Positions 19,001 through 52,000 of a stretch of 64,000 bases of DNA are shown here, in pieces. Below the pieces are notes generated by a model. It worked only from the letters and a program-made list of their open reading frames with translations. It did no database searches and had not been told where the DNA came from. Position 1 is the stretch's first letter, and the number at the start of each line of letters is the position of its first letter. Origin of the DNA: Mytilus edulis. Taxonomy: Eukaryota. Where the stretch lies: NCBI RefSeq assembly GCF_963676685.1, contig NC_092356.1, positions 38,254,001-38,318,000 on the forward strand. Reading direction: 5' to 3'. The position numbers were made by a program, and so were the translations under genes.

Positions 19001-22000
19001 GATAACTATGTGATGTAGATAACTTATGTTTATTTCAAACTTGGTCACATGCTGTATATATGTAAATGTTTACCAAAAAGAACAGTTCAACTGTTTTGAT
19101 TTAAGGTACACATATATGGTAAAGGTCACACCTATTAAATATACATGTATACCTTGAATTTATTTGCATTGGACCCTATAATGCTCCCTATATCATTTAT
19201 ATTGTCAATTATTGCATTCCAAATTGCCATTGTTCACAAAACAAAAACCACTAAAAAGGATGGCCATCATATGCAAAAGCAATATAAAATGCATACCCAT
19301 CAGCTGACCTAATTATTGCAATCACTTCAAAAACCTGGCCATATATCATATTATAAAACTCTTAATGAGTACCTTTGTTAGTCAGGTATAATATCATCTT
19401 TTTAAATTGATGTTGTAATGCATGATTGGATTAATTTTGCACTCACTGAAATATTATATAGATTTAGTAGTTTATTAGTATATATTACACCTTTTCATTA
19501 CAAATAAATAAATTAAACTTTCAGGTAAATGCAGCAACAGAATGTTTCCCTGGAAAATTACCGTAGAAAATTTGGGAAAGTATGAATAAGAAATTAGAGA
19601 GGCAAACAGATAACCAGAAAACAAAGATTTTGAAAGAAAAGAATTGCCACTAATAGTAATATGCTATATCTGACTGGGAGCAACATGTACTATTCAATAT
19701 GGAAGGATTGATAATTTTGACTGAGAACACAGTGAACTCTAATAATGCTATGACTATCAATAAGTACTTGACTGAATCAGAGGAGTAAACTATTTACACA
19801 TTTGTAAATATAACAGTTATATGTTTGCTTGATTATTGAGGCATTCAAAATAAAGAAAGTTGAAAAACCTTTGAAAAAGTTATAATTTCATCATTTTTTG
19901 GTTATGTTACGATGACAACTGAAATATATAATGTATTATCATTATGCTTCATCAAACTTAAATCATTAATTGTGGAAAAGGTGACAAAGTCTTTTTTAAT
20001 CCATTTACTTGCATGACTGTTACCTATGAATCGATAATTTAAAAAAAAATATATTTGGTGATTTTCGCTAACTTCTGAGTAATTTATTTTGCTCATTTAA
20101 GACCACAGTAATGCTAATATAAGCTGCATTACAATGTATCATAATATTTGTTTACATTTACATAGAAGCCATGTGTTGTTGGTCTGAAATCATGGTATTT
20201 GATCTGCCATTGTCTGTTAGGTTGTTAATCTTGCACATCAGAACAATGCAAAAACTTGAATTTTCCAACTTCATGTCCTGTTGCCATGGTAACCGTTGTT
20301 CATAGAAACCAAAAAATTGTTCTCATTTGATTGCCTTGTGAAACTGTATTATTCTGTGTTAGTTTAACAAAGGATATGACAACATATGTCACACTTTGAT
20401 CACCGATGATGAAAGATATACAAAAAACTGCTGTTGATCACTGTTTCGTTAGGGGTCACAAAAACATTTTTCGTGCAAAAAATAGTCTGGTGACCCATAT
20501 TTTTTTTTATTTCTTTTTAAAGCTCATTGTTATGACCATCTTATGTCAAATTTAAAAAAATATTCATTGGACCATTTTTTTGGAAATTTAAGAAAAATAG
20601 AAATTTTTAACAAAATCTGTGTTTTTTTTTGTGGAGCAGTGTTGATGAAATTAGAGACGAAATCAATGAAAATGAATAAAACTGCCATTATTTGTGTTTT
20701 ATTTACATTTTAAATAATAATTTTGTAATAAATGAAGAACAAACCCTTCAAAATACTTTCAAAGGCTTGAAAAAAATCCAGAGTTTCTACATCAGGTATG
20801 TATTTATGCATACACGTGATGTACCAACTTTGGTGACCGTTACCATGGAAACGAGTCTGGTGACATACTATTTTTAACTCAAATTTTCATAGAGGCCATT
20901 GCATAGTATATGTATGCAAATTTTAAGAAAAATTCAATGGTGAAAAAAAATTTGCTATATCTGTAGGGATCCACCTTAAAATATACCTCCATTTCTCTTT
21001 AACCATAATAGGTTAATATTTTAAGGTATTTTCACTGATTTAATGTGTTCTTGCTCTTATTCATACAATTTTTACAATAACAGTAGTTTATATATCTTAT
21101 TTTCAACAATGAACTTAGATATCATAATCTTCTTACCTGCAGCACATCAGCAGAGATCAAACTTCTAACTAGTCATTAAAATTAGAAAGATCATATCATA
21201 GGGAACATGTATACTTAAAGGGAAATCACACTATTGTTTATACGCATCGCTCTCGGCGCCGCTATAGTGTCGTAACCGTATTATGACGTCGCCGTTTTCG
21301 AGTCCGCCGATTTCTAAAATGGCGGCCCGCTCGAATGGTCGTTTCACGAAAGCAGGAGAATGCAAACGACGTATTGATTTAAGTGTAAAAATGAAAATGA
21401 TATACGAAACGGACAATTTGTTTGAAGCTGAAATCAGTGAACCAAGACAGTTAGACTCCTGTATCTGGATACCGGGAGAGAGGCGTGTTTTTGAACCATA
21501 TGAGATGGACAAACAGCTAAAAGCAGGTTGTGTAGACTGTGAATTACCACTTCAGTTTACCAACGTTACCGAAGAAACAAAGTGTGGTCTAGGGTGCATT
21601 CTGTATGTGGCATGTTCTTGTGGTGTGATAAATAAAATCTACTCCGGAAAGGTCCATTATGATGCAAAAAAACAGAAGACAAGACCAATATTTGATGTAA
21701 ATTCGAAAGCAGCAGTAGGTAAGATAAATCGGTAAACGAAATGAGTGATTCAAGTTTTTAAAATAATGTTACTGTTCCTTTATTCTTTACAAAAAAAAAG
21801 AAAACGTTGTTTTATTGGCACTAATACCACATCTTCTTATTTCTAATAAGTGAAAAAGAAAACTATCAGAATAAAAAGCTCAACAAAAATGCAACTAACT
21901 ACTTGAACTAGCTGTTCCTTTGTCCAAAGGACTCCAAACAAACAGTTTATTTATAAACAACATACTGCATGTATGTATTAATGATACTAAAAAAAAAACT

Positions 22001-25000
22001 GACCATCAAAGTTCTATGAATAACATAGTATTTTTCCAACTATTCCCTAAATATTACACTGTAAAACGTTGTCACAGATACCAGTATATTTTGAATTCGT
22101 ACGTTGTGCAATATGACGTCATGTTTATCATTATGACGTTACCGCATCAACCCATCCACCGTATAGCTACAAAGGAAAAGCAGGTGCTTCTTACCTTTTT
22201 GTGTATTGCACTGTATAGCATAAATTAATGTACAAATTAAAACAAGGAACATTTTGTAATTGATATGAGAACAATGTCAGAGCATACCAATCACAAATAA
22301 TTACATGTAATGACAATGATATATTTATTTGTTCAATGAACAGATTGTATAAACATGTCTTTTAAACTGTACTATATTACTACAGATTTTATTTATTTTT
22401 GAATGCAAACAAAGAATATTGTTTGAGATGATCCTTTTAACGATCATTCTTTAATTTTTTATTACAAATTCGGTTTGCGCCACCGTGACGGCATTTTTGA
22501 AAGACAATGATTTTTTACAAATACTAGTAACGGAAACATTTTTCTTACATTAATTTTATACGGCTATTCTACACCCTTTACTGAGGGGTAAGACCTTTAT
22601 AGGTACTTCGGGATCGGGTGTTTTTAAGCTCGGGGTTTCGGGATTGACCCTTGCGGGATCCGGGAATTCTGTCTCGAATTTCGGATTGTCGGGAATTAAA
22701 TTTATATAAATCAGAGAAATCGGGATTTCGGGGTCAGGACCCTCCTACCACACTCTATAGTTTAAGAAATTAATAAACAATGTGACCTCCGACGCGTAAG
22801 CTGATGATTAACACTTCAATGGCAGTAGTCCTTCTAGTGAACGTCGATTTTCATTGAGTTGGGTGCTCCAGACTTGTGTGATTAAGACAGCGATTTTCTG
22901 AGTGAGACTTTTATGGTTTTCCAGCATAGGACCGATCCCACTATTTTCATGTGGTTTCCATTCGGTCCAAACATTGTATCCTAATTTGATTTACAAAAAT
23001 TGTCATTTTCCCTGATCTCAATAAAAGAGCGTAAAAATCGTTCAAAAGATAAAAGAAACCCGTTTCATTTATTTTTTTTTTAACTATTTTTGTACTTTAT
23101 TAACTAACAACAACATATTGGAAAGAAGTTGTCTGGAAGATGTTGGTACTAATTTCGATATGAATTATCCGATGATGCGGTGCACTATTTATTGAACGCG
23201 CAGATTGATACATTTCTTTCAGTGTTTACCTCCTTCCTTTCTGAATAGTATATGTGAAATATTCGATTTCCCCGGACTATGCGGTATGGGCTTTGCTCAT
23301 TATTGAAGGCCGTACGGTGACCTATAGTTGTTAATGTCTGTGTCATTTTTTGTCTCTGGTGGACAGTTGTCTTATTGGCAATCTTACCACATCTTCTTTT
23401 CTATATAAGACATCATAAAATATTTCAAAACATCAAATATAGTTGATCTTTTGCATAAAGTATTTATTTAGATAAATAGATCAAACTCAAAAACTCAACT
23501 TTGACCACTGAACACTGAAAATGAGATCAATGTCCGATATCACCTACGAGCCAGAAGCGCACATCTTACAATCATTCAATACACCAAATAAAGTAGATCT
23601 ATTGCATACAGTAAATAGTAAAAACAGACCAAAAAACAAAAACTTAACTTAAACCACTGATGAAAATGAGGTCGAGCTCAGATGGCACACGCCAGTTAGA
23701 CATGTACATCTTACAGTTCTTTCATACATCAAATATACTAAGCCATTGCTTATAGTATCTTCAGATATGAACTGGACCTTAACCTATTAATCATAATCAT
23801 GATAATAAGACAAAAAGTAAATTTACAAAAAACCTGAACTTTTTTAAAACTAGTCACTTAAGCATGAAAATGAGGTCAAGGACAATGGACATGTGACAGA
23901 CGGAAACTTCGTAACATAATGCATCTATATGCAAAGTATGAATCATCCAGGTCTTCCACCTCCTAAAATGTAAAGCTTTTAAGAAGTTAGCTAACGCCGC
24001 CGCCGCCGGATTACTCTCCCTTGGTCGAACTTTCTGCGACAAAAGTCATCGGCTCGACAAACACACATTCGTTGTCCGGTTTTTCATTCTATAAAAAGAA
24101 ACATGCTTCTGTAAACCTAATTCCCCCCGAGAACAATAATTCCTTCTTTGTGGTGAATAGTTTTACATACATCCCAATAAGAGGCCTTTTCCGAATCAGC
24201 CCAGGAATCATCCCAAAAAAACAAATATCAAACCTCGAATAAGTCTCGAACGGATATTGGTCGAGGGATGATATCCGGACACGCATTAAACTTTCATAAT
24301 TTTATCATATACTAACGACTCACTAACGCAACAAGGCTAATAACCACATAACAGCCCTACCATGCGATGTTGCATACTGCTGATATGGGTATTCTGACCG
24401 GTTTTTAAGTTATTGATAGTTTGCTCCCGCTCATCACACGCATATATATGTATTTCATATAATCTAGAATTTTCAACGTATGATGCACATCAAATTGAAA
24501 GTATATCTAAGACTCGATCATTACTTTTATAGCTATGTATGACACTGGTCTTGGACCTGCAGAAGTAAACAGATATTTAGCTAATTTAAATATAAATGGG
24601 ATGTCACAATCTGCTTTCAAGAAAAGAGAAAAAGAAGTGTACGAGCCTATAAGAAAAGTTGCACAAAATTCACTAGATACTTCTTTAGAGGAGGAGAAGA
24701 GCAAATCTCCAGTAATAGAAGATAGGTATGTACGTGTATGAAGTTTACAACCACATGCAGTCAAACACCAAACTAAGTAACGACATAAACGTTACCAATA
24801 TCATTGCATAAGATGCGGATTTTAACAAGTGGTTTCTCGCCAGTAATGCTCGACGAGATCAAAATATGTGAAAACAGAAACTTTTCCAACTGTTGACATG
24901 AAAAGCAAATAAAAATTGACATTAAGTATAGCTTAATCCGAAGAAGGATAAATTCTTAATCTTTCAAATATGTTAAAACTCAAGAATATTATTAGGGCTC

Positions 25001-28000
25001 ATTCGTTCTTATTTTGAACCTTGATTTGCTCAAGTGGGTTAAGAATCCAGCGTTCTTCTTTGCATTCAACTGTTCTTTTCATTTGCACAAATGCACTCGA
25101 CGTAGTGAATAATATGGGTTTGTTTAAAACTTACTAATTGGTGTGAGACAGGGCTCCGCGTTGAATGCATCACCTTGGCCTATATAATTGCTTACATCGA
25201 CAATATTTTGTCTTGGAGATGAATGGAGATATTTCTCATTGGCAATCATACCACATCCTCTTATTTTATTAAACACAAATGTATTACAGTTTGTTTTCTT
25301 TTAAAGTCCGTTTTAGATGAATAAAAAAAAAAACACTCCACAGAAAACGTTATGATATTCATTGGACAGGTTTTTTTTTTTAAATAATGTTTTTCCGATA
25401 ATGAGTTTTTCAATTATTTGTAGTGAAAATGGTGAAGATGTTAGTCTGGTAACTGTCAAGTATGATATGGGGTGGCAAAAGAGAGGCTCCGGAAGAAAAT
25501 ACGACTCCAAATCAGGCGTTGGAACTTTAATCGGCGACCAAACAGGAAAGGTTGTAGGAAGGGGTATTCGGTCAAGCGATTGTAGAGTTTGTACCTATTG
25601 GGAAGCAAAACATGTTGAGCCACAGGAACACAAATGCACCCGCAATTGGTTTGGTTCTGCTAAGGGAATGGAACCTGACGTCGGCGCAAGACTAATAGAG
25701 GATATTGAAACAAAAAATTGTCAGGTTTCGACTGTTATTATGGATGACGACACTACAACCATGGCACGCATAAGACGAACAATCCAACATCCTATAAAAA
25801 AATTGAGTGATACGAACCATATCAAATCACAATTTAACAACAAACTATGGAACTTAAAGAATACCTTTAAAAATGATTTAACTAAACCTGCAATAACCCA
25901 TCTCAATAGGTGTTTTTCTTATGCTCTTTATTCAAACAGAAATAATCCGGAATCCATGAGTAATGACTTACAAGCTATTGTACCTCATCTTTATAAAGAA
26001 CATGACCTCTGCAATCAGAAATGGTGTTCATACAAAAGAAATCCTAATAAGTACAAACCCACGGTATCTCTTGATAGCCTTCCTCTTCGTAAAAAACTGG
26101 CTGAAATCATTGGGGAATACACCTCTAATGACAATATTGAGAAAATATCCCCCTGTGCATCCACAAAAGAGGTTGAATCGTTTCACAGCATGCTAGCCAA
26201 CAAAGCACCTAAGGCGAAACATTTATGCTCATCGTCAAGTTTGGAATGTCGGGTTGACTGCACTGTTGCTCAAAAAAATATATCGTATGGTTATATATCA
26301 CAGGTATATGAAGAGTGTGGTCTTTCACCAGGTAAAATAACAGAAAAATCGTCAGAAAAACTTACGGATAAAAGAAAATACCAAAATGATTATAAGAATT
26401 CAGCAGTTAATAAACGGAGAAAACTATTTCGGAAACAGATTATAAAAGAGAAGGAAACAGTAGTGGAGATGAGGGAAGGTGACACGTACAAAAAATCTAT
26501 TGATTTAGAACAACCGACCCTAATAGACATTGATTTCATATCTGATCCCTTGACAACCCCTTTATTAGAAACATTTGATGTCAAAATTGATAATATGTCA
26601 GTTGTTTACTTTGACTTAGAAACAACATCACTAGCCAATGATTGTGATATAATCCAAATTTCAGCCATTGAAAAGTCTTCAGAATTCAATCAGTACATTA
26701 CTCCATCACAGTGTATAAGTAGACAGGCATCATCCGTTACAGGACTATCAGTGTGGAACAACACACTTGTATATTATGGTCAGCGGGTAGATCAATGCAT
26801 TCCACAAAAAGCATTTCAAAATTTTATATGCTGGCTAGAGAAATTTCCCTCTCAGATTATTTTAGTTGGACATAATTGCCGACGTTTTGATGCCCCAAGA
26901 CTAATTAGATCCCTGTCTCAATATAATCTAAGCACATCATTTCAAAAGAAAGTAATCGGCTTTATGGATACACTATCTTTTTTCAGGAACAAGTATCCTC
27001 ATCTAAAGTGCCACAAGCAGGAATTTTTGGCTGAAAATTTATTACAAAAGCAATACCAGGCACACAATGCTTCTGAGGATGTTAGAATCTTACAATCTAT
27101 TCTTAACCATGCACAACCATCAGAAACAGAGATCTCAGAAAATTCTTTTAGTACAGAATCCCTAATCAGAAATATTGCTTCTGTCAAACAGACAAACCAA
27201 AGATATTTAACACTGCAAGGGCTTGTGGATAAAAAAATCATAACAAAATGTATGGCAAAAAAAATAGCCGAGAGTGGTCTTGATATGGCTCAACTGTTAG
27301 CAGCGTACCGTCGCGATGCGGTATGTGGGATTCAGCGTATATTTTCTGAGAAAAAGGTTGACAATAAACCAAGAGTAACAGCATGCAAGCGTATAGCTTC
27401 CGGAATCTGTAGTTTTCTGTCCAACGGAGAGAAGTAAATAAGGACGATCAGTTTAGACTGTCAGTTTTCTCACAATACATAAAACGTCAATACTTTAGTC
27501 TTCTATACATACTATATAGTACATAAATAAGTCAACAAAAATTGAATTGCATATTATTATTTATTCGGCTCAGTCTGTCGATTTAGTGAAAAGAATTTTT
27601 CGATATGTTCTAGTTCTGAATATGCATTTAACTTGCCACTAGTATTTCTTCAAACTGCATGTCAATTAGATAACGGTTGTCCTAACTAGTATCGTGTCGA
27701 CAGGGGACCATACGACCTTCAACAACAACAAAAATGTTTGGCTTTACAAGTCTCCAACAAGACAACTATTTAACACACAACACCCGTCCATTTATGTAGA
27801 GAAATCTGATGTGTAGTGGTTGTCATTTGTTGATGTGGTTGTTCTCGTTCTCGTTTTTCATATAGAGTAGACCGTTAGTTTTCCTGTTTGAATGATTTTA
27901 CATTAGTCGTTATTGGAGTCCTTTATAACTTGCTGATAGGTGTTAGCCAAGGCTCCGTGTTGAAGACCGTACTTTGATCTATAATTGTTTACTTTTATAA

Positions 28001-31000
28001 ATTGTGACTTGAACGGAGAGTTATCGCATTGGCACTCATACAACATCTTCTTATATTTACTTACAGAGTACTGCTAGATTTTAACATTAAGGTCCGTCTT
28101 ACGAAAGGGTATTCAATCCATAGATATATATATAATTTTATTTTGAGTGCAACCTGATATAACATTGTATACATACATTGATACAAAGTCAATCAGCCAG
28201 CCTTCAAAGGCTTACGAAGCACTATCAATTAATATCTATAATTTGCGCTAATATTGAAAATATGAAATTTATACTTCAAGGACATTTTAAAACAAGATTA
28301 TTTAGATATCACAATGAGAAAGTAACTGAGTTCTGATTTTAGAAATATTGAATATATAGTTTGACACTAGTTTACAGTTTGTATTTAGCAATTTAATGAG
28401 AATTTCGTGACTGTGTTAGCGTTAGTATTCATGTAATATTTGCCACTGAAAGTTTTAAAATACAAAACAAGTAAAGGACGAAAAATAAACCAAAAATAGT
28501 TCAGATGTATGTTCATGTTCAGGTCACTCACTGTGGTCTATTGCCTGTCAACAGAGATGAAGGGAGATAGTTGCATCCGATTATGTCGGAAAGGACAGTT
28601 CGTTTTTCAATACAGAGGTAGCTGGTTCTCTCTGAATACATTGGTTCTTTCAAAAAATGGCTAACGTGACATAGGAAAGAGAGCTGCAAGTGGCACACAC
28701 AATCAATCAGTTATTTTCAAATCACTTTTAGACATTTACTTGGCATAGATCATTATTGGCAAAAAAGTATATATAACAACTGAAACATACATCTGGTAGA
28801 AAAATATAAATTCAAATAAGTCAAGAGGGGCACCAACAGAAATAGAAACTGCAATGTTACTCTTTATTTTATCGGATCTCAAAATTTTAACTCTTACCAC
28901 AATTTTCACTATGATAACTCATAGTATAAATCGGAAGCTTATAAGTGTAACGAAAACTTATACAACTCAAAGTAAAACTCAAACTTTAACTCAAAATAAA
29001 GCTGTAACTCCAACTTAATCTCTTAATCTACCTGAACGTTTAGCCATATCTGATAAAAAAAAATAGTTAGATAAAAATTCCACAGAAAAAATAGTTATCT
29101 ATAATATGTCCACAGAAAACGGTATAAATGTAGCAAAACAGGATAAAATCAAAATCCGTTTATAACAATTTTTTTTTATTATTATATATCAATATTGGGA
29201 TGTGTATTTTGTCCAGTGGCGGTTTCATGATGTTTTGTAAGATATAATCAACCAAATTTTTCCAACAAAAAGGGGTAGGCGGGTTCCTGCCCACGCCCTT
29301 TGCTTAATTCGCCTCTGTTGTCATTGTGTGGTACATCTATCAGATGCAGTGCATTGCATAACATTACAAGTTGATCGACTTATTGAACGGTGATAATAAA
29401 TAAGAAATCGTAAAGCTCTAATACCCAGACAATGGACATTGAACAATATGATAATGTATGTACAATGAATATGAATACGGTGTGACGATGATCGAACTCA
29501 GTAAAAATTTGTTGCCACAGTTTGAATAAGTTATGCAGCGTTGTGTTAGTACGGAAATTTTAACCAATTGTCCTTTCGCTACATGTGGTTCGACATTAAG
29601 GTTTTTTTTATCATGCTGGGTTTTGCATTTTTTACATGGATTTTCAAGTTTTATCTTCCCGGTCCGAATGGACAAGGCAGTGCAATTGTTCTGCCTGTAG
29701 ACAAAAAGGCACGCACTTCTTTTCAGCGGAAACACTGCAAGCCGAAAATAATTTCTATCATATATGGCATGAGGCAATCATTAATTTCGTTTTCCTCATA
29801 CAAAAAATGCAATTAAAAAGAATGAGATGATTTCATCGTGGACAATATTTTTTTAAACTTTGTTGAACAATTCCATAGATTGATAAAAATATTAATGAAT
29901 AATCAAAATACCTTAAAAAACCATTTCAAACATGATATAAAGTTTGTAGTGAAATAATTTGTTTCAACTCAACGCAAGCTTTGCACAAAATGCTGCTGTA
30001 CCAGCAACGTCTTTCTATAACGTTAAAGAAAAGTTATATTTCCCGCCAAAAATCGATAATATGATTATTTCCTTTTTAGCGGTTTTAAAACATCGGTGAC
30101 CCCCCTTTTTTATTTATGCTTTTTAAATCTTCTCTGAAGCTGCAACTTATGCAGAAGTTTAAAGGAAAAAACATTAGTAGATTTTTTTTATTTTGAGAAA
30201 AATCTAGAATAGATAGGAATTAAAATGGCGGGAAATATTAAAAAGCCTTGAAAAGCAAGGAAATTGCTACAAATAACTGTTTTCAAGGTACAAGTTATAT
30301 TTGACTGTTTTTATTTTCTCAGTTAAACATCTTTTTTTAATAATTTTGGATTTTTTTAACAACTTGGAGGGCTATTTTTATATTTTGGTTATTAGCGATT
30401 CTTTAAGTTTTGATGACGTCATATCTCGAAAACAACATCGGTGACCCCAATTTTTTTTTCGCCTAAAATTTCGTAATAAGTATGATTTATCTGCATGCAA
30501 AATTTCAATTAATTATTATTAGTAGTTTAAATAGTGTGATTTCCCTTTAAGTTTCAAGTTAATTGGACTTCAACCTCATCAGAAAAATATCTTGACTAAA
30601 AACTTTAACCTGAAGCGGGACAGACAGACAGACGAATGGATGGATGTACAGACCAAAAAACATAATGCTCCCAAGGTTGGGCAAGAAGGGGCATAAAAAA
30701 AGAAGATAATTTACCTCCAGTAACTGATTCACTTGCTTGTGTGTCAACTGATAAAGGAATAGTAGCAGGATTGTTCCATCCAAGGGCCTTCATTGCAGAC
30801 TTCGAACCTGTTTTTGTATCAGTGTCAGGCAGCACAGCTCCTTTAAGATTTTGTTGTATCAAATTATTCTAAATAATAAAAAATAACTTTAAACAAAGCC
30901 CTAATTATACAACATTAATTGCAAACTTGATAAGTCTTTAGACACCTAAATGGGAGGAAGCTAATGAATAGGAAGAATTTACTGTTGTTTCATTCTATGC

Positions 31001-34000: not shown

Positions 34001-37000
34001 ATTCCTAAACTGTTGGGACCAAAACTCCCAAAATCAAAGCCAACCTTCTTTTAATGGTTATAAACCTTGTGTTTAAATTTCATAGATTTCTATTTACTTA
34101 TACTAAAGTTATGGTGCAAAAACCAAGAATAATGCTTATTTGGGCCCCTTTTTGGCCCCTAATTCCTAAACCGTTGGGACCTCAACTCCCAAAATCAATC
34201 TCAACCTTCCTTTTGTGGTCATAAACCTTGTGTTTAAGTTTCATTGATTTCTATTTAATTATACTAAAGTTATTGTGTGAAAACCAAGAATAATGCTTAT
34301 TTGGACCCTTTTTTGGCCCCTAATTCCTAAACTGTTGGAACCAAAACTCCCAAAATCAATCCCAACCTTCCTTTTGTGGTCATAAACCTTGTGTCAAAAT
34401 TTCATAGATTTCTATTAACTTAAACTAAAGTTATAGTGCGAAAACCAAGAAAATGCTTTTTGGGCCCTTTTTGGCCCCTAATTCCTAAAATGTTGGGACC
34501 AAAACTCCCAAAATCAATCCCAACCTTCCTTTTGTGGTCATAAACCTTGTGTTAAAATTTCATAGATTTCTATTCACTTTTACTAAAGTTACAGTGCGAA
34601 AACTAAAAGTATTCGGACGACGACGACGCAGACGACGACGCCACCATCATACCAATATACGACAATTTTTGCGATCGAATAAAAAGCCTTCAAATAAATT
34701 ATTATAGCAAATTTTACTTTTCACTTTTCACTTTTCCTTTACACAGCATTACTTCTGAATTCAAAATGGATATCAAAGTCAAATGATAATCAATGTATAT
34801 GTATTCTGTATACGTAGTATAGTAAACCAGAAGGTTGACTTAAAATAAATGTTTTTTATACGTATATTTTGTTTAACAGTCCCTTTAGTCTATCATTGGG
34901 AGAGAGAGGGGAAAAGAGTATGTTAAAAAAGCAGGTAACAAGGAATTCATTCGCTTCATATACCACTTTTAGAAAATAATTAATATATATATATGATATG
35001 CCCATTTCTAGGAATAGAAATGAACTTCAAGTACTTGAAATGTATTTTCTGTTTGGACTGACCAACAGTATGATAGTGGTATGACATAACACCACAGAAA
35101 AGTTATGAAGAATGAAGTTAAAAATTCTTCTACATTTTAACCCAGACACCCCACAGAGAGTCAAATAGTAGACAATCATATCACAACCACATCTTAGCTT
35201 GGGGTTTCTACCAAATATTTGAATGTCTTTACTGATGTATTGTTTCCTAAAGAACATAAAAAAACTCAGGTAAATTTTTCAAAAGCCTACACCAAAACAT
35301 TGAATTGTAAAACAGTGCACACAGAAACTCTGCAATAATTGAAACTCTTAAAATGTTGCACTAAAAACCCTATTGGGATTATCAATAGTTGGCAGGTCTA
35401 GATCTGAAACTGTTGTATTTCTCTATTTGTTTCATCCTATCAAATATTATACAACTAAAGTCACTCTTTCTATCCTTTGACTAGTTCCTGGACAAGAATT
35501 AAAGAACTATATATAAATTTAGGCAATAAAGCATCAGAAAATAAGGGAAATTATTTTTTAAATTGTTATTATTGACAAAAAGAAATGGTATTCTTTGTTA
35601 TACTAAATCACATACTCTGTTGTAGCTCTTCTACGTCTCTTTTTCCCAATAAATGATGAACATGCAAAATCAGTAGAATTCACTAATACGTAGGTCTTAC
35701 AAAATCCATCAGCTAGATAACACACTTGTAGGTCTACAGTAACTGCATATTTTGATGAATCAAATCCTGATGCTAAGCTGTAGTTATACTGGAAAGTGTC
35801 ACCTATATTCTCTGTCACTACTTTATCTGAAATATTTTATATCAATAATTTAGAATACATTCCTTTATCCTGAGATAAATTAAAATTGATGTTCAGTACA
35901 TGCATCAATAAACTATTGAAATACAGATGTGTCTCATTATTTTTCAGCAATTCATAAATAACTACCTATCGCCTTTTCAATTTCAATTACATAAAAATAT
36001 GTATAACAAGAATGTGTCCCCAGTACACGAATGCCCCACTCGCACTATCATTTTCTATGTTCAGTGGACCGTGAAATTTGGGTAAACCCTCTAATTTGGC
36101 ATTAAAATTAAAAAGATCATATCATAGGGAACATGTATACTAAGTTTGAAGTCGATTGGACTTCAACTTCATCAAAAACTACCTTGACCAAAAACTTTAA
36201 CCTGAAGCGGGACAGACGGACGAACGAACGGAACGGACGCACAGACCAGAAAACATAATGCCCCTCTACTATCGTAGGTGGGGCATAAAAATTCTAAAAT
36301 GTATTCATAACATCAATGAAAGGAAGTTAAAAGTTCAAATACAATTGTAAGTATGCTTTATCATATCACCATGCACATTTAACATTAAATTGTGGTTTTC
36401 TACAGTAACTTTGTTAAAATTTCTGACCAGTTAAACAGTTTGATCTGATAAAACAAATTGAAAGTTGGTCAGAATTTTGAATACACTACTATAGATAGAG
36501 ATCAACTCTTATTTTCAAGTCACAGTAAATTTAATACTTTTTAAACACTAGTTTCAATGTTTTTGCTAAAAAGTTATGTGGTCAAGTGGCATCAATGACC
36601 TCACAGATACAAACAATAAAAATTATTGATACTTATTACAGTTAGTTTTCTTTAAAAAAAATTAAATGGTAAAGGAAAAAAATGTCAAAGATTTTGTTCT
36701 AAATGGTAATACTTTTATATGTGGCGTCACTGGATTAATGTATAGCATCCAATGTAATGGCCCTCACCATATAAATCTACCCAACCTCAATCAAGAACAG
36801 TGTAAACATAGAAATTTTTATTTTAAATCTACCGATTCTTACTTCTAGTTGGACAAACCTGTTTCAACACTTTTCTGCCAATTTTTTCTTTCAATGCTAT
36901 ATTCTAACTCAGTGCAAGAAATAAAGTGAAATGTAACACTAGTCATCCGTTGTCCATTGATAAAGTTGATTGGAAGGCAACATCTTATTCCTTGACAGTC

Positions 37001-49000: not shown

Positions 49001-52000
49001 ATTTGTTTAAATACACCATATAACTATTTTAGCTGCTAATTGTATAAAAAAATCTTTTAACTACAAGTAATTTTCTTTAAAACAAAATAACTTACTCAGT
49101 TCTCAACACACCAACAAGTCCATGCTTCTTCAAAGTACCTAAAATATCAAATGTAGTTAATTTTATTTTAAACTATGAACAGCGAATTATGATAGTAATA
49201 AATATTTCAAAATTAAATAGTTCTTTACAAGTGACAATAACTGTAGAAAATTATTACAACCGAAACCATTCAAGATTTAATACCAATACTTAAAAATGGT
49301 CTGCCAAATTCTAAATTTATCTAAAGCTATGAAATAATGATTAATCGTTGAAGACCAATTGGTGACCTTCTGCTGTTGTCTGTTCTATGGTCGGGTTGTT
49401 GTATCTTTGACATATTTCCCATTTCCATTCTCAATTTTATTAGCATTGAAATCATTGCTGCTTTCTTGGCAGTGTGACCTTATTATAAACAAGAATAAAT
49501 GTGTTGTGCTTAGCATTGTAACTTAAACTAGAAATTATATTTTCAGAAAACAGGAAGGTGTTCCAACATATAAAAATGTCCCTAAAAATATAATAAAATA
49601 ATGCTCATACATTTCAACTCATTACTGCCAAGCTGCTTGCCAAATATAGTCATTCGGTGTTTTTACTTTTTAAGAAAGTTGTGATAAATATATATTTGGT
49701 TTTATTCAAAGTGTGTGTTTTAGAATTGGTAGTATGACACATGTTCATATAACAATATTTTATTTAAGGTGGTACCCAACACTTTCACTAAAATTAATTT
49801 GGCTCGTTTAAATTTCATAAAATTTTGACAAAGTATATACTTTGTCCCTTTGACGAAAATATAATAAATTCAAATAATTTGAACCAACCGTTTTTTCAGA
49901 AAAATTACACTGGTTATATAGCAGTTTGACAAATACTATTTTTGATCATTTAGAAGCTTAATATTCCCTTAACAACAAAAACGTAATTAAAACGTTTAGC
50001 TGATTTTACAGAGTTATCTCCCTGTAGTGTTAGGTACCACCTTAATGCCAAATTACCCCATGTGTAATCCACCAATGATATTTCCTCTGACAATCTTTCC
50101 AGTTGTAAAGTTAACTTCCTGTTGCAGTGGTCTATTGATAATGATACTTCCATTGTCCTTCCTAGATCTTCTACATCAACACAACAGCTGACCGTGTCAC
50201 ATGTATAACCCATGTTACATGTTATTTCTCCAGACAAAGCTGGAAGATCTTCATCATCTGTACATACTAAATTAAAAGAAAGTGTTAAAAACTGTGAATA
50301 TAAGTCTTTGACTTTAAATAAATTATCATTAAATTACTAATAACAATTAATTAAAATAGATATAAGAACACTGAATATTTAAAAGTGGTGAATTTTTATA
50401 GGCAAAATTTGATAGTTATATCTGTTAGAATTAAATTAAATATTCATTCATTGGCTAGCTTATCGTCAATTTGCTAACTATCATTTCTCTGACTGCTAGC
50501 CTATATTTAACAATCTACATAGGACCATAACTCTGAACGGCAAAAGGGAAAATTGTCCATATCAAACATCACCCCAATATTGTCATCAGTAACAATATAT
50601 TCAAATTTGAATTGGTTGAAAGATTCAGAGGTTACTGATTTATTTTTTTAAATAGAGTGCTATTTTTCAGAGTATCAATAATCATAACTCCTGGTTGGTG
50701 AAAGTGAAAATCAATCGTTAAAACAGAACTTGACCTCCAATTTGTCACAAGTAACAAGATATTAGAATTTCAAAAGTTTTGTTTGAATGGTTAATAAGTC
50801 ATGGCATAGAAACATTTGGAAATTGCAGCCCCTGACTGTTCATGGCTGTAAATTGTTTCACCATTATAATAATAAAATTATTTCTTCAGAAAATTATGTT
50901 TTAAAACAAGAATGTGTCCCCAGTACACAAATGCCCAATCTGCACTATCATTTTCTATGTATAGTGACCGTAAAAATGGGGGAAAATTAATGGCATTAAA
51001 ATTAGAAAGATCATATCATAGGGAACATGTGTACTAAGTTTCAAGATGATTGGACTTCAACTTCATCATAAACTACCTCGACCAAAAACTTTAACCTGAA
51101 GCGGGACAGACGGATGAACTGACAGACAGACGGTTGGACAAACAAACTGACGCACAGATCAGAAAACATAATGGCCATAAATGGGAAATGCCGCATAAAA
51201 AAAGTCTTATCAGCCATGTATCCTGTAATGATTGTCACAATGGTGAAATTTTGGCAGCCTTAAAACCAGGTTACAGTACAGACTCTCTTTTTCAAAAGGG
51301 TAATATGAATGATTAATAAAAGTCAATGTGTTTGACAGCTACCTAACAACACAAAATACTTCTACAGGAAAAATTTCTAAAATATATTAACAAATATCTA
51401 TACAATACATTCAGCACTTTATTGTCCAGAGTCTAGGAATAAATTTATCACACTATCAAAGAAATATCCATTTACATACATGACTTCCATCCATTGGTAG
51501 AAGGACTGTACAAATCACTGAAGTTGTTACATCTCACAGAAAGAAGATAGTAAGACAAACCAAGGTGTTCAAGCAACTCAGATGCTGCAATACTGTCCAA
51601 ACTATCATTTCCATCAAGTCCTCTTTCATTCTTCCACTTTGATATGGAAAAATCTGTAAAAAATACAGTAAATATGCATCCTCTCAAAAAAACATCTGTA
51701 GCATAAACTATATATTTTTTTGTGAATAGTATAAAAGAACAAGAATGTGTCCGGGGTAAACAGATGCCCCAATCGCACTATAATTTTTTATATTCAGTGG
51801 ACTGTGAAATTGGGATTAAAATTAGAAAGATCATATCATTGGGAACATGTGACCTATGTTTCAAGTTGATTGAACTTCAAATTTATCAAAAACTACCTTG
51901 ACCAAAAACTTTAACCAGAAGCGGGACAGAAGGAGGAACGAACAGATGGATGCACAGACCAGAAAGCATAATGCCCATAAATGGGGCATAAAAACTTTAA

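What the first reader, a model, noticed from the sequence alone, without database searches (positions are those of the whole stretch)
21219..30546. Intact Kolobok-type transposon whose DDE transposase is fused to a PML/Plex9-like DEDDh exonuclease
Seen: perfect 17-bp TIRs, TTAA duplications, and three exons that splice in frame into ~868 aa with no stops or frameshifts. Candidate DDE residues are D at 25464, D at 25743 and E at 26175, with a DxxH motif and several Cys/His clusters. After a basic NLS-like stretch (KRRKLFRK) comes a complete DEDDh active site (D 26613, E 26619, D 26889, H 27063, D 27078) and a tail (MAKKIAESGL..LLAAYRR..GIQRIF..KPRVT) like the C-terminal region of PML/Plex9 proteins. 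Established: TTAA plus RR..YY termini define Kolobok; Kolobok subgroups are known to carry accessory enzymes; DEDDh nucleases of the TREX1/PML-exon-9/Plex9 type degrade ssDNA/cytosolic DNA and can restrict retroelements. Inference: this cut-and-paste element carries its own 3'-5' exonuclease in cis. It could trim ends or excision products, dampen host DNA sensing, or attack competing retroelements, and it may represent a mobile reservoir of the PML-type exonuclease domain. I cannot confirm whether this exact architecture is already in Repbase.
Basis: partly seen in the sequence, partly recalled or inferred. Interest (0 to 1): 0.9.

Follow-up and report, generated by a model that had tools for sequence, protein, structure and literature searches.

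The report
Intact KolobokD transposon with Plex9-like exonuclease
This is an intact cut-and-paste DNA transposon of the blue mussel, from the already described KolobokD lineage, whose transposase carries an exonuclease module that is strikingly close to the fish Plex9 / PML exon-9 exonuclease, which hints that this vertebrate module came from such transposons.

Summary
There are perfect 17-bp TIRs (21219-21235 / 30530-30546) and TTAA duplications. Three exons with GT/AG borders read in frame into 868 aa (ATG 21319) or 880 aa (ATG 21283). Pfam finds a Mutator-like (Kolobok) transposase split over the three exons, then a DEDDh exonuclease, then a PML_C domain.

The genome is Mytilus edulis. It holds 185 exact TTAA+TIR ends, which suggests roughly 90 elements, with different flanks in the copies inspected. 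Every other copy I inspected lacks the transposase or carries a broken one. This copy is the only intact autonomous one found.

The transposase-exonuclease fusion is not new. Kojima & Bao 2022 named it KolobokD, in molluscs, arthropods and cnidarians.

Purifying selection acts equally on both halves (dN/dS 0.12 and 0.13).

The tree could not be rooted. The scan had noted this stretch twice before.

The parts
21215..21218 (.). Left TTAA target-site duplication
   Evidence: The flanks join across a single TTAA-like site in uninterrupted paralogues of the host repeat.
21219..21235 (+). Left 17-bp terminal inverted repeat (5'-AG terminus)
   Evidence: There are 185 exact TTAA+TIR ends in the genome against 0 for the reversed control pattern.
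21284..21302 (+). Left subterminal motifs: TGACGTC at position 66 from the end and TTTTCGAG at position 77. TGACGTC overlaps the first ATG.
   Evidence: TGACGTC sits at the same offset in 12 of 12 copies examined. A role as a transposase-binding or promoter element is inferred.
21319..21718 (+). Exon 1 (alternative upstream ATG at 21283). It encodes the N-terminal Cys-rich part of the transposase, Pfam PF20700 profile positions 2-82.
   Evidence: M1 of the Solemya homologue P0317 aligns to the residue encoded by ATG 21319.
21719..24532 (+). Intron 1 (GT...AG). It contains unrelated repeat fragments and about 0.9 kb that the chromosome-3 copy lacks.
24533..24725 (+). Exon 2 (PF20700 profile positions 80-135)
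24726..25423 (+). Intron 2 (GT...AG)
25424..26411 (+). Exon 3, transposase catalytic core. It holds D 25464; CCHC finger at 25581/25590/25629/25635; MDDD at 25743-25751; DxxH at 25809/25818; HHCC finger at 25986/26001/26010/26025; and E 26175.
   Evidence: Pfam E 8.9e-52. Residues are conserved in 24 homologues.
26412..26435 (+). Basic KRRKLFRK stretch in the linker (NLS-like)
   Evidence: The KRRxLxxK consensus is conserved in alignment A2. Nuclear-import function is inferred.
26595..27155 (+). DEDDh 3'-5' exonuclease domain, with D 26613, E 26619, D 26889, H 27063 and D 27078
27204..27425 (+). PML_C (SAM-like) domain, followed by stop TAA at 27435-27437
   Evidence: Pfam PF25244 E 3.4e-19. 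The region is helical in the model. Exu EXO+SAM (5L80) is the next-best fold match after the two Plex9.1 entries.
27438..30529 (+). 3' non-coding part. Segments at about 28428-28951 and 29338-30529 are shared with the non-autonomous copies.
30415..30432 (-). Right subterminal motifs: TGACGTC at position 126 from the right end and TTTTCGAG at position 115
   Evidence: Both sit at the same offsets in 12 of 12 copies examined.
30530..30546 (-). Right 17-bp terminal inverted repeat (CT-3' terminus)
30547..30550 (.). Right TTAA target-site duplication

Best explanation
Window 21219-30546 is an intact autonomous DNA transposon of the KolobokD lineage (Kolobok superfamily) in Mytilus edulis.

Its single three-exon gene encodes an 868-880 aa protein. 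The N-terminal two-thirds is a Kolobok DDE transposase with a Cys-rich DNA-binding head, a CCHC finger, a DxxH signature and an HHCC finger. A basic linker follows. The last 290 residues or so are a catalytically complete DEDDh 3'-5' exonuclease plus a SAM-like PML_C domain. This is the same EXO-SAM module found in fish Plex9/PML-like proteins, PML exon 9 and Exuperantia.

Inferred mechanism. The transposase recognises the 17-bp TIRs and the fixed-offset subterminal motifs, excises the element, and inserts it at TTAA. The tethered exonuclease, helped by the nucleic-acid-binding SAM-like domain, trims 3' ends of DNA intermediates in cis, either at transposon ends or at the donor gap. It is as necessary to the element as the transposase.

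The element is probably the transposase source for the copies, roughly 90 by the end count, that share its exact ends; all those inspected were non-autonomous or degraded.

Shown: the anatomy, the homologies, family mobility, conservation of catalytic residues, and purifying selection on both halves.

Inferred: current activity, the substrate of the exonuclease, and the step at which it acts.
For: Termini and insertion site. TIRs, TTAA and AG...CT termini are present. The flanks rejoin across one site in uninterrupted paralogues of the host repeat.

Copy number and mobility. The genome holds 185 exact TTAA+TIR ends against 0 for the control. Five of six paired copies examined have TTAA on both sides, and all have different flanks.

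Domains and gene model. Pfam finds PF20700, RNase_T/Exu_RNase_H_like and PML_C in one reading frame. The exons tile full-length homologues of 841-904 aa.

Conserved residues. The Kolobok signature residues and DEDDh are invariant or nearly so in 24 fused homologues.

How common the fusion is. 55 of 154 fetched relatives carry transposase-like sequence N-terminal to the exonuclease. Named examples occur in many bivalves, Haliotis, Ptychodera, Glandiceps, Temnothorax and a newt.

Selection. Against the 90%-identical degraded copy on chromosome 3, dN/dS is 0.12 for the transposase half and 0.13 for the exonuclease half.

Closest structures. Plex9-type proteins are closest by sequence and by fold.

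Literature. The KolobokD lineage definition and its zinc-finger pattern are given in PMC9587614.
Against: No transcript or junction-read evidence could be obtained.

No second intact or near-identical copy was seen in this assembly. Recent transposition of the autonomous copy itself is therefore not shown.

The own-genome DNA search scored only the best 40 candidates, so an intact copy could have been missed.

Nothing here shows what the exonuclease does biochemically.
Confidence: 0.85

Rival explanations
1. The exonuclease does not take part in the transposition chemistry. It acts in trans for the element's benefit. It might degrade excised or cytosolic DNA so that host DNA sensing is not triggered, or destroy cDNA intermediates of competing retroelements, as TREX1 and Plex9 do for LINE-1.
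For: The domain is closest to Plex9.1, which the literature describes as an ssDNA exonuclease restricting L1 (PMC10123124). The genome holds at least 127 PML_C matches, many in ORFs of about 285 aa without a transposase in the same frame. This suggests the module can be kept on its own.
Against: The module is covalently fused to the transposase behind an NLS-like linker in dozens of lineages. Its tree is broadly congruent with the transposase tree. This fits a cis role at the transpososome better than a trans role. There is no functional data either way. The two roles do not exclude each other.
Confidence: 0.25
2. The locus is a domesticated, immobile host gene derived from a KolobokD element and kept intact by host-level selection, not an active transposon.
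For: It is the only intact copy found. dN/dS is about 0.12. The nearest full-length copy is 10% diverged.
Against: The TIRs and TTAA duplications are perfect. The element still carries 3 kb of non-coding 3' sequence and subterminal motifs shared with the non-autonomous copies that have its exact ends. It sits inside a dispersed repeat. Low dN/dS between two transposon lineages is also what selection for transposition predicts.
Confidence: 0.07
3. The C-terminal module is a catalytically silent nucleic-acid-binding domain, like human PML PXL or Drosophila Exuperantia, that only helps DNA or RNA binding.
For: The EXO+SAM architecture is the one reported for the pseudo-exonucleases Exu and PXL (PMC13659232). 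Exu is the next-best structural match after Plex9.1.
Against: All five DEDDh residues are present and are invariant or nearly invariant across 24 fused homologues. PXL and Exu have lost them. The best match is the active enzyme Plex9.1, at 41% identity and rmsd 1.0 Å.
Confidence: 0.08
4. The transposase and the exonuclease are two separate genes or products, and the fusion is an artefact of reading one long ORF.
For: Many database entries hold only the EXO+PML_C part at 250-350 aa. RNA evidence is missing here.
Against: One uninterrupted 2,013-nt exon runs from the catalytic D through the stop. RefSeq and other gene models of 865-904 aa in seven other genera have the same three Pfam domains in one protein. 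Many of the short entries come from contigs of only a few kb and may be truncated gene calls.
Confidence: 0.03

Closest known systems
KolobokD lineage of the Kolobok superfamily (Kojima & Bao, Mob DNA 2022, PMC9587614)
   Same: Both have TTAA duplications, 5'-RR...YY-3' termini and a DDD/E transposase with the C/DxxH signature. [quoted passage not shown] KolobokD is reported from molluscs.
   Different: The paper compares the exonuclease with Exu, TREX and ERI1 only. It does not mention PML, Plex9 or a C-terminal PML_C/SAM-like domain. Whether this particular M. edulis family is catalogued in Repbase or Dfam could not be checked. The held supplements name no KolobokD family.
Plex9.1/Plex9.2 and the PML-I C-terminal DEDDh exonuclease domain of jawed vertebrates (Mathavarajah et al., NAR 2023, PMC10123124; PDB 9MRC/9MRD)
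   Different: Plex9 and PML are host genes without a transposase, TIRs or TTAA duplications. Teleost Plex9 has lost the PML_C part. PML joins the module to a TRIM/RBCC N-terminus. In mammals the active site is lost.
Drosophila Exuperantia (EXO-like + SAM-like domains, PDB 5L80) and human PML PXL domain (PMC13659232)
   Different: Exu and PXL are pseudo-nucleases lacking the DEDD residues. Sequence similarity to Exu is weak (E 2e-4).
TREX1 / TREX2
   Different: Sequence similarity is only marginal (E about 1e-2, about 20% identity). They have no SAM-like domain and are dimeric host enzymes.
Other Kolobok lineages with accessory enzymes: KolobokE (PD-(D/E)xK nuclease), KolobokP (His-Me endonuclease), KolobokH (RecQ helicase)
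   Same: They share the superfamily and the habit of adding a DNA-processing enzyme downstream of the transposase.
   Different: The accessory fold is different in each. Here it is DEDDh.
piggyBac
   Same: It also makes TTAA target duplications.
   Different: Per PMC9587614, piggyBac also makes TTAA duplications but lacks the 5'-RR...YY-3' termini of Kolobok. Here the termini are AG...CT and the transposase matches PF20700 with a DxxH signature.

Membership tests
Kolobok superfamily | [quoted passage not shown] | tested here: met
   TTAA lies on both sides of this copy, and on both sides of five of six other paired copies with different flanks. Empty-site paralogues agree.
Kolobok superfamily | Termini 5'-RR ... 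YY-3' | tested here: met
   The termini are 5'-AG ... CT-3'.
Kolobok superfamily | [quoted passage not shown] | tested here: met
   D 25464, MDDD at 25743-25751, D25809-x-x-H25818 and E 26175 are present. They are invariant or nearly invariant in alignment A2. Pfam PF20700 matches at E 8.9e-52.
Kolobok superfamily | [quoted passage not shown] | tested here: met
   H188, H193, C196 and C201 of exon 3 (25986-26025) are invariant in 24 homologues.
KolobokD lineage | Second CCHC zinc finger downstream of the first catalytic D | tested here: met
   C53, C56, H69 and C71 (25581-25635) are nearly invariant.
KolobokD lineage | DEDDh (DnaQ-type) exonuclease encoded downstream of the transposase | tested here: met
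   It lies in the same ORF. RNase_T and Exu_RNase_H_like match. DEDDh residues are conserved. The fold is confirmed.
KolobokD lineage | The transposase groups with reference KolobokD families in a phylogeny of the D-to-E core | not testable with these tools
   No Repbase or reference KolobokD sequences were on hand, and the supplements name none. It does cluster with other exonuclease-fused transposases.
Plex9 / PML C-terminal DEDDh exonuclease (EXO + PML_C) family | DEDDh exonuclease domain more similar to Plex9/PML than to TREX, ERI1 or Exu | tested here: met
Plex9 / PML C-terminal DEDDh exonuclease (EXO + PML_C) family | PML_C (SAM-like) domain after the exonuclease | tested here: met
   PF25244 matches at E 3.4e-19 and 69 bits, against a cut-off of 27 bits.
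Plex9 / PML C-terminal DEDDh exonuclease (EXO + PML_C) family | Orthology with the vertebrate host genes: synteny with the pml locus and no transposase | tested here: not met
   Here the module is part of a transposase inside TIRs in a mollusc. It is a homologue of the domain, not a Plex9 or PML gene.
piggyBac superfamily | piggyBac-type termini rather than the 5'-RR...YY-3' termini of Kolobok | tested here: not met
   The termini are AG...CT, the Kolobok type. The only transposase family matched is PF20700.

The most novel reading that the evidence does not exclude
The EXO-SAM module of PML exon 9 and of the fish Plex9 genes was acquired in an early jawed vertebrate by domestication of the C-terminal exonuclease module of a KolobokD transposase. 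Insect Exuperantia may be another such acquisition. KolobokD elements like this one would then be the still-mobile source of that module.

Support:
- The fused architecture is spread over molluscs, arthropods, hemichordates, cnidarians (literature) and a newt. PML and Plex9 are reported only from gnathostomes.
- Fish Plex9 is as similar to this mussel exonuclease (about 40-45% identity) as other KolobokD families within the same mussel genome are.
- The fish clade (SH-aLRT 98) lies inside one of two exonuclease groups that mirror the two transposase groups.

Not excluded: the root lies on the fish stem, which would mean the transposon captured a host gene. No outgroup was available.

No paper in the searchable library links PML or Plex9 to Kolobok.
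Probability: 0.5. Interest if true: 0.8.

Novelty: new member of a known kind. Interest (0 to 1): 0.6.

Why it matters
The element itself is a clean, intact exemplar of a published but barely studied lineage. KolobokD gets one short section in one paper. This copy could serve to test why a cut-and-paste transposase needs its own 3'-5' exonuclease.

The wider value is evolutionary. PML-I's isoform-defining domain and the Plex9 exonucleases appear abruptly in jawed vertebrates, and their origin is unexplained. The 2026 PXL paper explicitly calls for evolutionary analysis of EXO-SAM proteins.

A transposon origin would add PML to the list of transposase-derived vertebrate genes. It would also make the ancestral activity testable with a living relative.

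Tried and rejected
P0406, a possible non-D Kolobok transposase, matched too short a stretch and was left out of the tree.

Steps left out by rule:
- I did not build or search the joined three-exon protein. Exons were translated and searched apart.

Attempts that gave nothing useful:
- Single-sequence AlphaFold gave a useless model with pLDDT 37. It was replaced by an alignment-based model with pLDDT 96.7.
- The word-indexed protein search with the 290-aa module found only 8 hits, so it was replaced by the full HMMER scan.
- An Atlas search of the unknown N-terminus of P0013 gave nothing.
- The supplements of PMC9587614 name no KolobokD family.

Hypotheses rejected:
- piggyBac, because of the termini and the transposase family.
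- Further autonomous copies among six TIR pairs spaced 6-11 kb apart. All six lack a transposase.


Full report
**1. The observation**

The 17-mer AGGGAAATCACACTATT lies at 21219-21235 and its exact reverse complement at 30530-30546. Each is flanked by TTAA, at 21215-21218 and 30547-30550.

The left and right flanks belong to a short dispersed repeat. Uninterrupted copies of this repeat lie elsewhere in the window, at about 36090-36264, 50994-51114, 51815-51974 and 62368-62502. Joined across one TTAA, the flanks align to these copies without a break. This fixes the element's boundaries to the base.

- AG|GTAAGA after 21718
- AG before 24533
- GT after 24725
- AG before 25424

The two split codons read GCT and AGT.

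The coding length is 868 aa from ATG 21319, which has a good AAAATGG context. The first residue of the Solemya homologue aligns to this methionine. From ATG 21283 the length is 880 aa.

Each exon was handled by reference.

**2. What the gene encodes**

Pfam places one Mutator-like transposase profile (PF20700) across the three exons, at profile positions 2-82, 80-135 and 146-357. In the same frame of exon 3 it then finds RNase_T/Exu_RNase_H_like and PML_C (PF25244, E 3.4e-19).

Eight full-length homologues of 841-904 aa from other animals match exon 1 and exon 2. In five of them exactly one residue, the split codon, lies between the two matches. Exon 3 follows after a short variable linker. 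This is homology support for the splice model.

An alignment of 24 transposase-fused homologues (coordinates) shows these residues as invariant or nearly invariant:
- first D at 25464
- CCHC finger at 25581/25590/25629/25635
- DxxH at 25809/25818
- HHCC finger at 25986-26025
- E at 26175
- DEDDh residues at 26613, 26619, 26889, 27063 and 27078

A KRRxLxxK stretch (26412-26435) in the linker is also conserved.

**3. Which organism, and is the family mobile**

The exonuclease part is 100% identical to a Mytilus edulis protein. RefSeq M. edulis proteins sit on contigs whose lengths equal those of this assembly's chromosomes 3 and 12.

The genome contains 185 exact copies of TTAA plus the 17-bp TIR, 89 forward and 96 reverse. 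The reversed control pattern occurs 0 times. Most pair up at a spacing of 3-5 kb.

I examined six paired copies. All have different flanks, and five have TTAA on both sides. These copies have lost the transposase. They keep the first ~200 bp, the last ~1.2 kb and some internal pieces.

All 12 copies examined keep TGACGTC at position 66 from one end and position 126 from the other. They also keep TTTTCGAG at position 115.

Only three kinds of transposase-bearing copies were seen:
- the window copy, which is intact
- a copy on chromosome 3 at 90% identity, with stops and frameshifts
- five heavily degraded copies in a duplicated stretch of chromosome 12

Six further TIR pairs spaced 6-11 kb apart hold no transposase. 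The window copy is therefore the only intact autonomous member I found. The genome search scores only the best candidates, so this is not proof of uniqueness.

**4. Selection**

Between the window copy and the chromosome-3 copy, exon 3 shows the following:
- transposase half: dS 0.21, dN 0.025, dN/dS 0.12
- exonuclease+PML_C half: dS 0.11, dN 0.015, dN/dS 0.13

The exonuclease has been under the same purifying selection as the transposase. This argues that the element needs it.

**5. The exonuclease module**

A sequence search of solved structures gave these matches:
- four Plex9-type 'exodeoxyribonuclease III' entries (9L8B, 9L85, 9MRC, 9MRD): E 3e-39 to 1e-33 over ~180 residues
- Exuperantia: E 2e-4
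- TREX1: E ~1e-2

An AlphaFold model built on 82 homologues has mean pLDDT 96.7. Foldseek ranks zebrafish Plex9.1 first, with E 5e-18, target TM 0.93 and 39% identity. Exuperantia EXO+SAM, TREX2 and TREX1 follow.

Residues ~197-290 of the model are a helical SAM-like domain, which is the Pfam PML_C match.

The 2026 PXL paper describes this EXO-SAM arrangement for human PML-1 and Exu, both of which have lost the DEDD residues. Here all of them are kept.

**6. What is already known**

Kojima & Bao (Mob DNA 2022, PMC9587614) define Kolobok by TTAA duplications and RR...YY termini. They name a lineage KolobokD that encodes a DEDDh (DnaQ) exonuclease. It occurs in molluscs, arthropods and cnidarians and carries the two zinc fingers seen here. 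They suggest that the exonuclease degrades DNA intermediates from the 3' end during transposition.

The fusion itself is therefore catalogued.

That paper compares the exonuclease with Exu, TREX and ERI1 and never mentions PML. The PML/Plex9 paper (PMC10123124) and the PXL paper never mention transposases or Kolobok. No paper in the library links the two.

**7. Breadth and the PML/Plex9 connection**

A full HMMER scan of 1.84 billion representatives found 2,508 relatives of the 290-aa module. Of these, 194 scored below E 1e-30.

Of the 154 proteins fetched up to that point, 55 carry transposase-like sequence N-terminal to the exonuclease; 38 of these have a match of at least 100 aa.

Proteins with all three Pfam domains occur in these genera:
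- bivalves: Mytilus, Crassostrea/Magallana, Saccostrea, Pinctada, Solemya, Argopecten, Mizuhopecten
- gastropod: Haliotis
- hemichordate: Ptychodera

Mercenaria and the ant Temnothorax carry the transposase and the exonuclease but have no PML_C match on record. In Glandiceps the transposase and the exonuclease module were found only in separate proteins.

A 917-aa protein of the newt Lissotriton carries a transposase remnant plus RNase_T and PML_C.

After the self-hit, the best hit in the whole library is a fish Plex9-like protein from Cottoperca. Paddlefish and sturgeon 'protein PML-like' entries have EXO+PML_C and align end to end with the mussel module.

I built a 111-row maximum-likelihood tree. 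The 29 fish sequences form one clade (SH-aLRT 98). This clade sits inside a group (support 94, subgroup 89) that also contains transposase-fused proteins of Mytilus and Crassostrea.

A transposase tree of the same proteins splits into two groups (96). These groups match the two main exonuclease groups. The module has therefore co-evolved with the transposase, and the fish clade joins one of the two groups.

No outgroup could be obtained. A root on the fish stem, which would mean capture of a host gene by the transposon, is not excluded.

Three points favour domestication in vertebrates:
- The fused form is spread across phyla, while PML and Plex9 are reported only from gnathostomes.
- Fish Plex9 is no more distant from this exonuclease than other KolobokD families within the same mussel genome.
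- The stem of the fish clade is not unusually long.

I put this reading at about 0.5.

**8. Mechanism**

Shown: a complete transposon with a selected, catalytically complete exonuclease tethered to its transposase.

Inferred: the transposase binds the TIRs and fixed-offset subterminal motifs and moves the element between TTAA sites. The exonuclease trims 3' ends of intermediates in cis. The SAM-like domain adds nucleic-acid binding.

A trans role, degrading free DNA or retroelement cDNA as Plex9 and TREX1 do, is a live alternative and does not exclude the cis role.

**9. Limits**

- There is no RNA evidence.
- There is no cross-species locus comparison.
- There is no Repbase comparison.
- The tree is a quick search with SH-aLRT support only and has no outgroup.

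The scan had noted this stretch twice before. I confirmed one note, on the empty site. I partly confirmed the other, on the subterminal motif.

**Verdict**

The element is a new, intact member of the known KolobokD lineage. The added value is its close and apparently unreported kinship with the vertebrate Plex9/PML exonuclease module.

Noticed in passing
G000 genome-wide, e.g. C13:1385650-1385871, C3:15177550-15177771, C2:7833573-7833797: The genome holds at least 127 matches to Pfam PML_C. Several sets of copies share identical scores and sit in open frames of about 285-288 aa, which is EXO+PML_C without a transposase in the same frame. These may be other KolobokD families with the exonuclease on its own exon, or elements that carry only the exonuclease.
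   Followed up: no
Proteins P0013, P0015, P0156 (ENA eukaryote assemblies, unnamed): These 771-832 aa proteins have an EXO+PML_C module that is among the nearest relatives of the window's module. Their N-terminal ~480-540 residues match no Pfam family and gave no Atlas hit. This may be a different fusion partner for the same module.
   Followed up: partly
window 21284-21302 and 30415-30432; loci L031, L034-L037, L039-L041, L043-L045: TGACGTC (a CRE-like half-palindrome) lies at fixed offsets 66 and 126 from the two ends in 12 of 12 copies, and TTTTCGAG lies at offset 115. At the left end TGACGTC overlaps the first ATG. These are candidate transposase-binding or promoter elements.
   Followed up: partly
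window 20819-21218 and 30547-30946; paralogues at 36090-36264, 50994-51114, 51815-51974, 62368-62502: The element is inserted in a short dispersed repeat that ends in ...CTGAAGCGGGACAGACAGACAGAC. The window holds at least five copies of this repeat. Its nature (SINE or MITE) was not determined.
   Followed up: partly
G000:C12:2.95-3.28 Mb (L003-L007, L010-L013, L032, L033): Five degraded copies at 84% identity to the element lie 30-175 kb apart on chromosome 12 with the same internal structure. This looks like a segmental or tandem duplication that carried a dead copy along, not separate insertions. The TIR was not found at mismatch 3 or fewer in the two loci examined.
   Followed up: no
Proteins P0094, P0030, P0049 (Anabrus simplex, Mormon cricket): These are proteins with two to four tandem Exu_RNase_H_like domains, up to 1,333 aa. 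They form a long-branched clade placed next to the fish Plex9 clade, which may be long-branch attraction.
   Followed up: no
window 22959-23857 (intron 1): About 0.9 kb is present in this copy's first intron but absent from the chromosome-3 copy. Short pieces of intron 1 (element positions about 1360-1512 and 2057-2174) match unrelated loci. These are probably nested repeat insertions.
   Followed up: no
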